Source: Octopus sinensis (lineage: Eukaryota). Taken from it: a DNA stretch of 64,000 nucleotides. The notes beneath the pieces are model-generated. The model saw only the letters and a list, made by a program, of their open reading frames with translations, did not search any database and was not told where the DNA came from. Shown here piece by piece: positions 1,232 through 19,941 of the stretch. Position 1 is the stretch's first letter. Each line of letters opens with the position of its first letter. The stretch covers positions 1 through 64,000 of the forward strand of contig NW_021834475.1 of the NCBI RefSeq assembly GCF_006345805.1, in the 5' to 3' direction. A program made the position numbers and the translations under genes.

Positions 1232-19941
<18,710 letters not shown>

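What the first reader, a model, noticed from the sequence alone, without database searches (positions are those of the whole stretch)
3041..3061. The two copies differ inside the tethered agonist: TSFARLM (A) versus TSFALLM (B)
Seen: copy A has GCT CGA (3050-3055) where copy B has GCC CTA (55,286-55,291); these are the only differences in this 150-bp exon. Known: aGPCRs self-cleave at HL|T and the following T-x-F-A-[V/I/L]-L-M Stachel strand is buried in GAIN and activates the 7TM; position 5 is normally hydrophobic. Inference: copy A may have altered cleavage, fragment association or agonism, making the pair a signalling and a dampened/decoy receptor. It is a substitution pair, not a homopolymer indel, so long-read error is less likely.
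Basis: partly seen in the sequence, partly recalled or inferred. Interest (0 to 1): 0.7.

Follow-up and report, generated by a model that had tools for sequence, protein, structure and literature searches.

The report
Octopus receptor duplicate with altered agonist
Two mirror-image, almost identical copies of an octopus adhesion-GPCR gene differ by one amino acid (Leu to Arg) in the receptor's built-in activating peptide; the difference is real in this assembly and unusual for the family, but it looks like a very recent mutation in a redundant, weakly constrained and poorly assembled gene copy, not a shown division of labour.

Summary
Confirmed: copy A reads GCT CGA (3050-3055, TSFARLM). Copy B reads GCC CTA on the minus strand (55,291-55,286, TSFALLM). 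These are the only differences in the 150-nt GPS exon.

The window is the first 64 kb of Octopus sinensis contig VCDQ01005339.1. It holds a palindrome with arms of about 22 kb that carry the 3' two-thirds of an ADGRG2/G6-like adhesion GPCR, tail to tail.

The O. vulgaris orthologue and a paralogue both have GCC CTn, so both changes arose in copy A, most likely as one two-base event. The arms are about 99.9% identical here but about 2% from O. vulgaris, which points to arm-to-arm gene conversion and a young change.

Arg at Stachel P5' has no counterpart: 109 relatives have V, I, L, one M and one N. Published work places this residue in the hydrophobic core of GAIN subdomain B.

The signalling/decoy reading is not supported:
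- Copy A is cut off by the contig start.
- Copy B, with the canonical Stachel, carries at least five 1-bp deletions in GAIN exons.
- RefSeq annotates both copies as truncated proteins.
- dN/dS is 0.6-1.1.
- No independent sequence shows the Arg.

Best reading: a young, probably damaging missense under relaxed constraint. Interest is low to moderate.

The parts
3041..3061 (+). Stachel (tethered agonist) codons of copy A: T S F A R L M. The derived bases are 3052 (T) and 3054 (G).
55280..55300 (-). Stachel codons of copy B: T S F A L L M. This is the ancestral state, identical to the O. vulgaris orthologue.
2912..3061 (+). GPS exon of copy A: 150 nt, phase 0-0, weak donor GTTAGT. It encodes the last GAIN beta-strands, the CSCNHL|T cleavage site and the Stachel core.
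   Evidence: (PF01825, E=1.9e-14)
55280..55429 (-). GPS exon of copy B.
1232..1360 (+). GAIN-B exon of copy A ([16 protein letters not shown]...GPIDQ). It is in frame and matches O. vulgaris base for base.
56977..57104 (-). The same exon in copy B, with a 1-bp deletion (AAA to AA, opposite A position 1258). Read from the upstream exon's phase, the frame shifts and runs into a stop.
6109..18020 (+). 7TM exons of copy A: TM1 6109-6224, TM2 9236-9359, TM3 11279-11423, TM4 12393-12465, TM5-7 17630-18020.
   Evidence: (PF00002, E=2.5e-39)
19903..19941 (+). Last coding exon of copy A ([12 protein letters not shown], then stop).
38405..52230 (-). 7TM and last exons of copy B: 52230-52115, 49103-48980, 47055-46911, 45940-45868, 40669-40279, 38443-38405. 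Private changes are V>I (TM1), K>E, Q>E and N>K.
58359..62017 (-). Upstream GAIN exons, present only for copy B: E1 62017-61786, E2 61316-61149, E3 58511-58359. E2 has four 1-bp deletions and one 3-bp insertion relative to O. vulgaris.
1..22070 (+). Palindrome arm A. It starts at the contig end. Identity to arm B is about 99.9% (substitutions) at 1.4-17.6 kb, 96-98% up to 21.2 kb, and 85-92% up to 22.1 kb.
33450..58330 (-). Palindrome arm B. It is collinear with the single O. vulgaris locus and has an extra segment of about 2.8 kb at 34,292-37,133.
22071..33449 (.). Unique spacer with a LINE reverse-transcriptase fragment (28005-28586, minus strand), a 16-bp satellite (30251-31894) and microsatellites.

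Best explanation
The Arg/Leu difference is a single, recent two-base mutation (GCC CTA to GCT CGA) on copy A. Copy A is one arm of an inverted, gene-converting duplicate of an Octopus sinensis ADGRG2/G6-like adhesion GPCR gene.

Shown: Leu is ancestral. The arms are far more alike than the two octopus species are. Arg has no counterpart at this position in relatives.

Inferred: the residue is Stachel P5' (X0.49, S14.49), which in the resting receptor packs in the hydrophobic core of GAIN subdomain B next to the conserved disulfide. An Arg there should mainly disturb insertion of the last beta-strand, and so GAIN folding, self-cleavage, surface delivery or the NTF-CTF hold. It should disturb docking of the freed agonist into the 7TM bundle less, because that depends chiefly on P3', P6' and P7'.

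Because the gene is duplicated and the family evolves under weak constraint, the change is most likely a tolerated, neutral-to-damaging hit on a redundant copy, that is, early degeneration. It has not been erased by arm-to-arm conversion and is not an evolved decoy.
For: - Polarity: the O. vulgaris orthologue locus has GCC CTA and the paralogue L004 has GCC CTT, so both A bases are derived.
- Single event: the expected number of substitution pairs no more than 2 bp apart by chance is 0.02.
- Youth and gene conversion: at 1.5-17.5 kb, differences private to A or B are 0-5 per 1.5-kb bin. Differences private to O. vulgaris are typically about 5-30 per bin, or about 2%, where the three-way alignment is sound. 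A-B divergence rises to 2-4% and then 8-15% toward the centre.
- Position: 109 relatives have V46, I39, L22, M1, N1. Among 446 vertebrate ADGRG2 orthologues, X0.49 is V in 81.8% and I in 18.2%. V0.49 is embedded in the hydrophobic environment of subdomain B, points to the conserved disulfide, and is one of the three lowest-entropy positions under GAIN-conditioned design. Only L0.50 is strongly constrained by the 7TM domain (PMC13470171).
- The ADGRF1 alanine scan reported signalling effects at P3', P6' and P7' (PMC10148833).
- Weak constraint: dN/dS is 0.58 (A vs O. vulgaris), 1.09 (B vs O. vulgaris) and 0.73 (A vs B).
- Redundancy: two copies on one contig and many octopus paralogues.
Against: - No reads, RNA or second assembly confirm the Arg codon (searches found nothing).
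- Counts for dN/dS are small (5-15 changes).
- No structural or functional test separates loss of function from a tuned or hypersensitive receptor. AlphaFold2 gave identical models, with low confidence at the Stachel.
- Differences between the arms are mildly enriched in exons (3 of 12, P=0.02 if counted singly). This could hint at selection for divergence.
Confidence: 0.45

Rival explanations
1. Functional specialisation. The Arg tunes copy A. It either weakens the GAIN hold on the Stachel, giving easier or constitutive agonist exposure, or blunts cleavage or agonism. The pair would then act as receptors with different set-points, or as a receptor plus a decoy.
For: - The change is radical, sits at a GAIN-constrained position, and has no counterpart in 109 relatives.
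- It has persisted inside a tract otherwise homogenised by conversion.
- Arm differences are mildly enriched in exons.
- From my own knowledge, not tested here: GAIN-core missense changes can raise mechanical sensitivity, as reported for ADGRE2 C492Y in vibratory urticaria.
Against: - Copy B, the supposed normal partner, is frame-broken in its GAIN exons as assembled.
- Copy A is incomplete in the contig.
- No annotated protein contains the Arg exon.
- dN/dS is near neutral.
- The change is very young, so selection has had little time to act.
Confidence: 0.15
2. Not a fixed difference between paralogues. The Arg codon is either a consensus or polishing error on a low-quality unplaced contig, or a heterozygous variant of the one sequenced animal that the assembler assigned to one arm.
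For: - The contig is an unplaced 73-kb piece that ends inside arm A.
- Small indels between the arms are as frequent as substitutions, 13 against 12.
- All nine 1-bp indels that could be polarised are homopolymer deletions. This is an error signature.
- Reads from two arms about 99.9% identical cannot be placed uniquely, so polishing there is unreliable.
- No independent sequence carries the Arg.
Against: - The difference is two clean substitutions with no indel, inside 2.2 kb that is otherwise identical. Such errors are rare in long-read consensus.
- Ambiguous read placement tends to erase differences between arms, not create them.
- No annotated paralogue has Arg here that mis-mapped reads could have donated.
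Confidence: 0.25
3. The whole locus is decaying. Both copies are pseudogenes, or make only 7TM-only products, so the Stachel change has no consequence.
For: - Copy B has five frame-breaking deletions, and exon E2 is much more diverged from O. vulgaris than its neighbours.
- RefSeq products are 281, 319 and 315 aa fragments.
- The O. vulgaris model skips the GPS exon.
- dN/dS of B against O. vulgaris is 1.09.
Against: - All 7TM exons, the GPS exon and the splice sites are intact in both copies, with no stop codons.
- The deletions look like assembly errors.
- The orthologous exons are intact in O. vulgaris.
Confidence: 0.15

Closest known systems
Vertebrate ADGRG2 (GPR64) and ADGRG6 (GPR126), adhesion GPCR subfamily G
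   Same: They are the best matches among solved structures (7xke/7wui ADGRG2, E=2e-58; ADGRG6, ADGRG4). They share the GPS motif C-x-C-x-H-L|T, the TSFxφL(M/L) Stachel core and the 7tm_2 domain. NCBI names the octopus proteins G2-like, G6-like or GPR126-like.
   Different: Identity is only about 33-40%. The gene belongs to an octopus-specific expansion with its own N-terminus and a conserved ...AETNA/T/F C-terminus. Copy A has Arg at P5', where vertebrate ADGRG2 orthologues have only V or I.
Octopus vulgaris CAI9743411.1 (OX597842.1, 13.15 Mb), the orthologue
   Same: It is collinear with arm B plus the spacer at 95-98% DNA identity. Exons match with 0-7 differences each. The Stachel codons are GCC CTA, as in copy B.
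   Different: Only one copy is seen in the 46 kb that could be fetched. The deposited model skips the GPS exon, although the exon is intact in the DNA.
Large palindromes kept alike by arm-to-arm gene conversion (for example, primate sex-chromosome ampliconic palindromes). The comparison is from my own knowledge.
   Same: The locus has inverted arms of 20 kb or more, a unique spacer, a gene copy in each arm, and arm identity (about 99.9%) far above the between-species identity of the same sequence (about 98%).
   Different: Identity falls in steps toward the spacer. Only one assembly supports the structure, and one arm runs off the contig.
Natural or engineered changes that alter Stachel exposure: the ADGRG5/GPR114 splice variant, ADGRE2 C492Y, and alanine scans of P3', P6' and P7'
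   Same: A change in or next to the buried last beta-strand of GAIN is expected to alter cleavage, the NTF-CTF hold or agonism (PMC10148833; PMC11697300).
   Different: Those cases were tested experimentally. No published test of a charged residue at P5' was found in the papers read, and nothing has been tested for this gene.

Membership tests
Adhesion GPCR (class B2), ADGRG-like | Secretin-type seven-transmembrane domain | tested here: met
   PF00002 7tm_2, E=2.5e-39, residues 105-341 of the spliced copy A protein. AlphaFold2 predicts seven helices plus helix 8, mean pLDDT 84. PDB matches are ADGRG2, G6, G4 and L3.
Adhesion GPCR (class B2), ADGRG-like | GPS motif with the H-L|T/S cleavage triad and paired cysteines directly before TM1 | tested here: met
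   PF01825 GPS, E=1.9e-14. CSCNHL|T is present in both copies. C38, C40, H42, L43 and T44 are at least 90% conserved in a 51-sequence alignment.
Adhesion GPCR (class B2), ADGRG-like | Complete GAIN domain (subdomains A and B) upstream of the GPS | tested here: inconclusive
   Copy B exons E1-E3 and the exon before the GPS exon align to the GAIN regions of octopus paralogues and of the O. vulgaris orthologue. Pfam found nothing in the isolated pieces. The precomputed GAIN hit on the RefSeq fragment is weak. Copy B's frames are broken, and copy A's upstream part lies off the contig.
Adhesion GPCR (class B2), ADGRG-like | Stachel core T-x-F-x-φ-L-M with a hydrophobic P5' | tested here: not met
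   Copy B (TSFALLM) meets it. Copy A (TSFARLM) keeps T1, F3, L6 and M7 but has Arg at P5', where 109 relatives have V, I, L, M or N. Only this one position fails.
Adhesion GPCR (class B2), ADGRG-like | Autoproteolysis and tethered-agonist signalling | not testable with these tools
   This needs protein expression and reporter assays. AlphaFold2 did not tell the two variants apart.
Gene-converting palindrome | Long inverted arms around a unique spacer | tested here: met
   Arms of about 22 kb and a spacer of about 11.4 kb.
Gene-converting palindrome | Arm-to-arm identity well above orthologue identity for the same sequence | tested here: met
   At 1.5-17.5 kb, differences private to one arm are 0-5 per 1.5-kb bin. 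Differences private to O. vulgaris are typically about 5-30 per bin where the alignment is sound. The inner arm segments are 4-15% diverged.
Gene-converting palindrome | The structure is real in the genome (spanning reads or a second assembly) | not testable with these tools
   Only this unplaced contig carries the locus. O. vulgaris sequence beyond the 46 kb fetched could not be reached. Dense arm-specific substitutions at 18-22 kb argue against a fold-back read artefact or a join of two alleles.

The most novel reading that the evidence does not exclude
Copy A is intact and expressed. Its Arg at Stachel P5' loosens the last beta-strand from the GAIN core, giving a receptor with a different mechanical or constitutive set-point. 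Selection keeps this one codon different inside a palindrome that otherwise homogenises the two genes. It would be a natural experiment that separates the GAIN-imposed and the 7TM-imposed constraints on a tethered agonist.
Probability: 0.08. Interest if true: 0.55.

Novelty: new member of a known kind. Interest (0 to 1): 0.2.

Why it matters
If the Arg is real and copy A is expressed, it is a natural charged substitution at a Stachel position that published design work says is constrained mainly by the GAIN domain and not by the 7TM pocket. That would make it a ready-made test of the dual-constraint idea for tethered agonists.

The locus is also a neat example of a gene pair inside a gene-converting palindrome in a cephalopod.

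As it stands it is one residue, in one unplaced long-read contig with clear indel errors, in a large and fast-evolving octopus gene family. Its practical value is mainly as a caution about reading functional divergence from such contigs.

Tried and rejected
1. Independent evidence for the Arg.
- A search with the stop-to-stop ORF around the GPS exon found no candidate.
- A search with the GPS-to-TM3 piece found only other paralogues.
- The first search found no protein with TSFARLM.
- RefSeq's copy A protein omits the exon.

2. AlphaFold2 of the GPS-exon-to-C-terminus pieces of A and B, using the same 51-row alignment. Mean pLDDT was 84.2 against 84.3. The Stachel block scored 54 in both, with a short helix at 46-50 against 47-51. 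This is uninformative.

3. Gene conversion from a third paralogue as the source of CGA. Rejected at protein level, because no octopus paralogue has Arg there. The paralogue L004 has GCC CTT.

4. Fold-back (missed adapter) read artefact. Rejected, because the palindrome has an 11-kb unique spacer and arm-specific substitutions.

5. Two alleles joined head to head. Unlikely, because the innermost arm parts differ by 8-15% and by a 2.8-kb indel. There, arm B tracks the O. vulgaris locus and arm A does not.

6. O. vulgaris P0001 as the missing partner arm. Rejected, because it lies 2.9 Mb away and matches the gene body at only about 77-91% DNA identity.

7. Whether O. vulgaris has the inverted copy could not be settled. 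The fetched locus ends opposite window position 29,000.

8. Pfam on isolated upstream exon pieces gave no hit.

Full report
**Observation**

On the + strand, 3041-3061 reads ACA AGT TTT GCT CGA TTA ATG (TSFARLM), followed by gttagt. The reverse complement of 55,280-55,300 reads ACA AGT TTT GCC CTA TTA ATG (TSFALLM). The exon is 2912-3061 in copy A and 55,429-55,280 in copy B. It is 150 nt, phase 0-0. A full alignment of the two copies lists 3052 (synonymous) and 3054 (Arg/Leu) as the only differences in the exon. They are also the only differences in a 2,193-nt block.

**Where this is**

A RefSeq protein that matches copy B exactly (XP_036355741.1, P0002) maps to Octopus sinensis contig VCDQ01005339.1 (GCA_006345805.1, 73,261 bp). 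Its coordinates equal window coordinates, so the window is the first 64 kb of this unplaced contig.

The window is a large palindrome.
- Positions 1-18,878 pair with 58,330-39,373.
- Pairing continues at lower identity to about 22,070 and 33,450.
- The unique spacer of about 11.4 kb holds a LINE reverse-transcriptase fragment and a 16-bp satellite.
- Arm A starts at the contig end, so copy A is truncated by the assembly.

**The gene**

Spliced exons give a GPS motif (PF01825, E=1.9e-14) and a 7tm_2 domain (PF00002, E=2.5e-39).
- Copy A exons: 1232-1360, 2912-3061, 6109-6224, 9236-9359, 11279-11423, 12393-12465, 17630-18020 and 19903-19941.
- Copy B has the mirror set plus three upstream GAIN exons at 62,017-58,359.
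- The nearest solved structures are ADGRG2, ADGRG6 and ADGRG4.
- The nearest proteins are a large set of octopus G2-like, G6-like and GPR126-like paralogues.
- The two copies are arranged tail to tail.

**All differences between the copies**

| Position (copy A) | Exon | Change (A / B) |
|---|---|---|
| 1258 | exon before the GPS exon | 1-bp indel; B lacks an A and is frame-shifted |
| 3052 | GPS exon | synonymous |
| 3054 | GPS exon | Arg / Leu |
| 6184 | TM1 exon | V / I |
| 17766 | TM5-7 exon | K / E |
| 17988 | TM5-7 exon | Q / E |
| 18002 | TM5-7 exon | N / K |
| within 19903-19941 | last exon | synonymous |

The Stachel is therefore not the only protein difference.

**Polarity**

The O. 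vulgaris orthologue (CAI9743411.1; locus L002, OX597842.1 at 13.15 Mb) is collinear with arm B plus the spacer. Its GPS exon is intact and reads GCC CTA. A more distant paralogue reads GCC CTT. Both Stachel changes are therefore derived in copy A. The indel at 1258 and the four other amino-acid changes are derived in copy B.

**Age and mode**

Between 1.5 and 17.5 kb the arms differ by 0-5 private substitutions per 1.5-kb bin. Both differ from O. vulgaris by about 2% where the three-way alignment is sound. Toward the centre, A-B divergence rises to 2-4% and then to 8-15%, with segments where A or B alone tracks O. vulgaris.

This pattern fits an old inverted duplication whose outer arms are kept alike by gene conversion. 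The Arg codon must then be younger than the last conversion of that tract. Two substitutions 2 bp apart are expected 0.02 times by chance, so they are best read as one multi-nucleotide event. Exonic enrichment of arm differences is 3 of 12 (P=0.02), or 2 of 11 events (P=0.10). That is not compelling.

**Is the residue special?**

In 109 relatives with a recognisable GPS, P5' is V (46), I (39), L (22), M (1) or N (1). None is charged.

PMC13470171 calls this position X0.49.
- It is V in 81.8% and I in 18.2% of 446 vertebrate ADGRG2 orthologues.
- It lies in the hydrophobic environment of GAIN subdomain B and points to the conserved disulfide.
- With F0.47 and L0.50 it is one of the three lowest-entropy positions when sequences are designed against GAIN.
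- Only L0.50 is tightly constrained by the 7TM domain.

The ADGRF1 alanine scan reported signalling effects at P3', P6' and P7' (PMC10148833). The most conserved Stachel residue is the neighbouring Leu, S14.50, equal to P6' (PMC11697300). Reviews write the core as TxFxxLM (PMC13197933). Another paper describes the hydrophobic interaction motif as five hydrophobic residues (PMC13538470). From my own knowledge this motif includes P5'.

The inference is that Arg here should mostly harm packing of the last GAIN strand. The effect on the freed agonist is uncertain.

**Why the signalling/decoy reading is weak**

- Copy A's N-terminal half is not in the contig.
- Copy B has a frameshift in the exon before the GPS exon. 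It also has four 1-bp deletions plus a 3-bp insertion in exon E2 relative to O. vulgaris.
- RefSeq splits B into 315-aa and 319-aa products. It starts copy A's 281-aa product in the TM1 exon, without the Stachel.
- dN/dS is 0.58 (A vs O. vulgaris), 1.09 (B vs O. vulgaris) and 0.73 (A vs B), on small counts.
- AlphaFold2 models of A and B are the same, with low confidence at the Stachel.

**Assembly quality**

In non-repetitive sequence of the homogenised tract there are 13 small indels against 12 substitutions. All five arm indels that could be polarised are deletions in short homopolymers relative to O. vulgaris, and so are the four 1-bp deletions in E2. This is the signature of long-read consensus error, so frame integrity cannot be judged here.

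Even so, no independent sequence shows the Arg. A fold-back artefact or a join of two alleles is unlikely, given the spacer and the dense arm-specific substitutions near the centre.

**Verdict**

The difference is real in the assembly, derived in copy A, and unusual for the family. The best-supported reading is a young, probably damaging missense in a redundant copy under weak constraint (0.45). The rivals are an error or a heterozygous variant (0.25), functional tuning (0.15) and decay of the whole locus (0.15). This is a new member of a known kind, of low to moderate interest.

Noticed in passing
window 1-22,070 and 33,450-58,330; spacer 22,071-33,449: The window is a palindrome with arms of about 22 kb. 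Arm-to-arm identity falls in steps toward the spacer: about 99.9%, then 96-98%, then 85-92%. Arm B carries an extra 2.8 kb at 34,292-37,133. The pattern suggests an old inverted duplication with ongoing arm-to-arm gene conversion.
   Followed up: partly
window 61,149-61,316 (minus strand), exon E2 of copy B: Relative to O. vulgaris there are four 1-bp deletions, one 3-bp insertion and about ten mismatches in about 170 nt. The neighbouring exons are far cleaner. RefSeq ends a 315-aa product at the resulting stop. It is unclear whether this is real decay or a local patch of assembly error.
   Followed up: partly
window 1258, 5503, 9488, 16680, 16926 and their partners in arm B: Every 1-bp indel between the arms that could be polarised with O. 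vulgaris is a deletion in a short homopolymer. Small indels are as common as substitutions in the homogenised tract. This is a consensus-error signature for the contig.
   Followed up: yes
L002 (O. vulgaris OX597842.1) about 18,849-18,998; window 3062-3067: The deposited O. vulgaris model CAI9743411.1 skips the intact, in-frame 150-nt GPS exon. That exon's donor is weak (GTTAGT or GTTGGT) in the window, in the orthologue and in a paralogue whose model does include the exon. Skipping would remove the cleavage site and the Stachel. It may be alternative splicing or an annotation choice.
   Followed up: partly
window 18,000-19,500 versus 39,400-40,300: Here arm A is 99.3% identical to O. vulgaris, closer than the usual 2% species difference. 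Arm B has 36 private substitutions. The history is mosaic: conversion from elsewhere, or a different orthology for this segment.
   Followed up: partly
window 3675-5038 and 53,303-54,666: A minisatellite with a period of about 123 bp and about 11 copies lies in the intron after the GPS exon, mirrored in both arms.
   Followed up: no
window 30,251-31,894; 28,005-28,586 (minus strand); 61,440-61,760: There is a 16-bp satellite of 103 copies and a LINE reverse-transcriptase fragment in the spacer. The O. vulgaris annotation calls a 628-aa gene over the orthologous stretch. A long (GTA/GAA)n microsatellite lies in the intron before exon E2.
   Followed up: no
window 19,903-19,941 and 38,405-38,443: The last exon encodes ...TAETNA. 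Octopus paralogues end in ETNT, ETNF or ETNA. This is a conserved C-terminal tail resembling a PDZ-binding motif.
   Followed up: no
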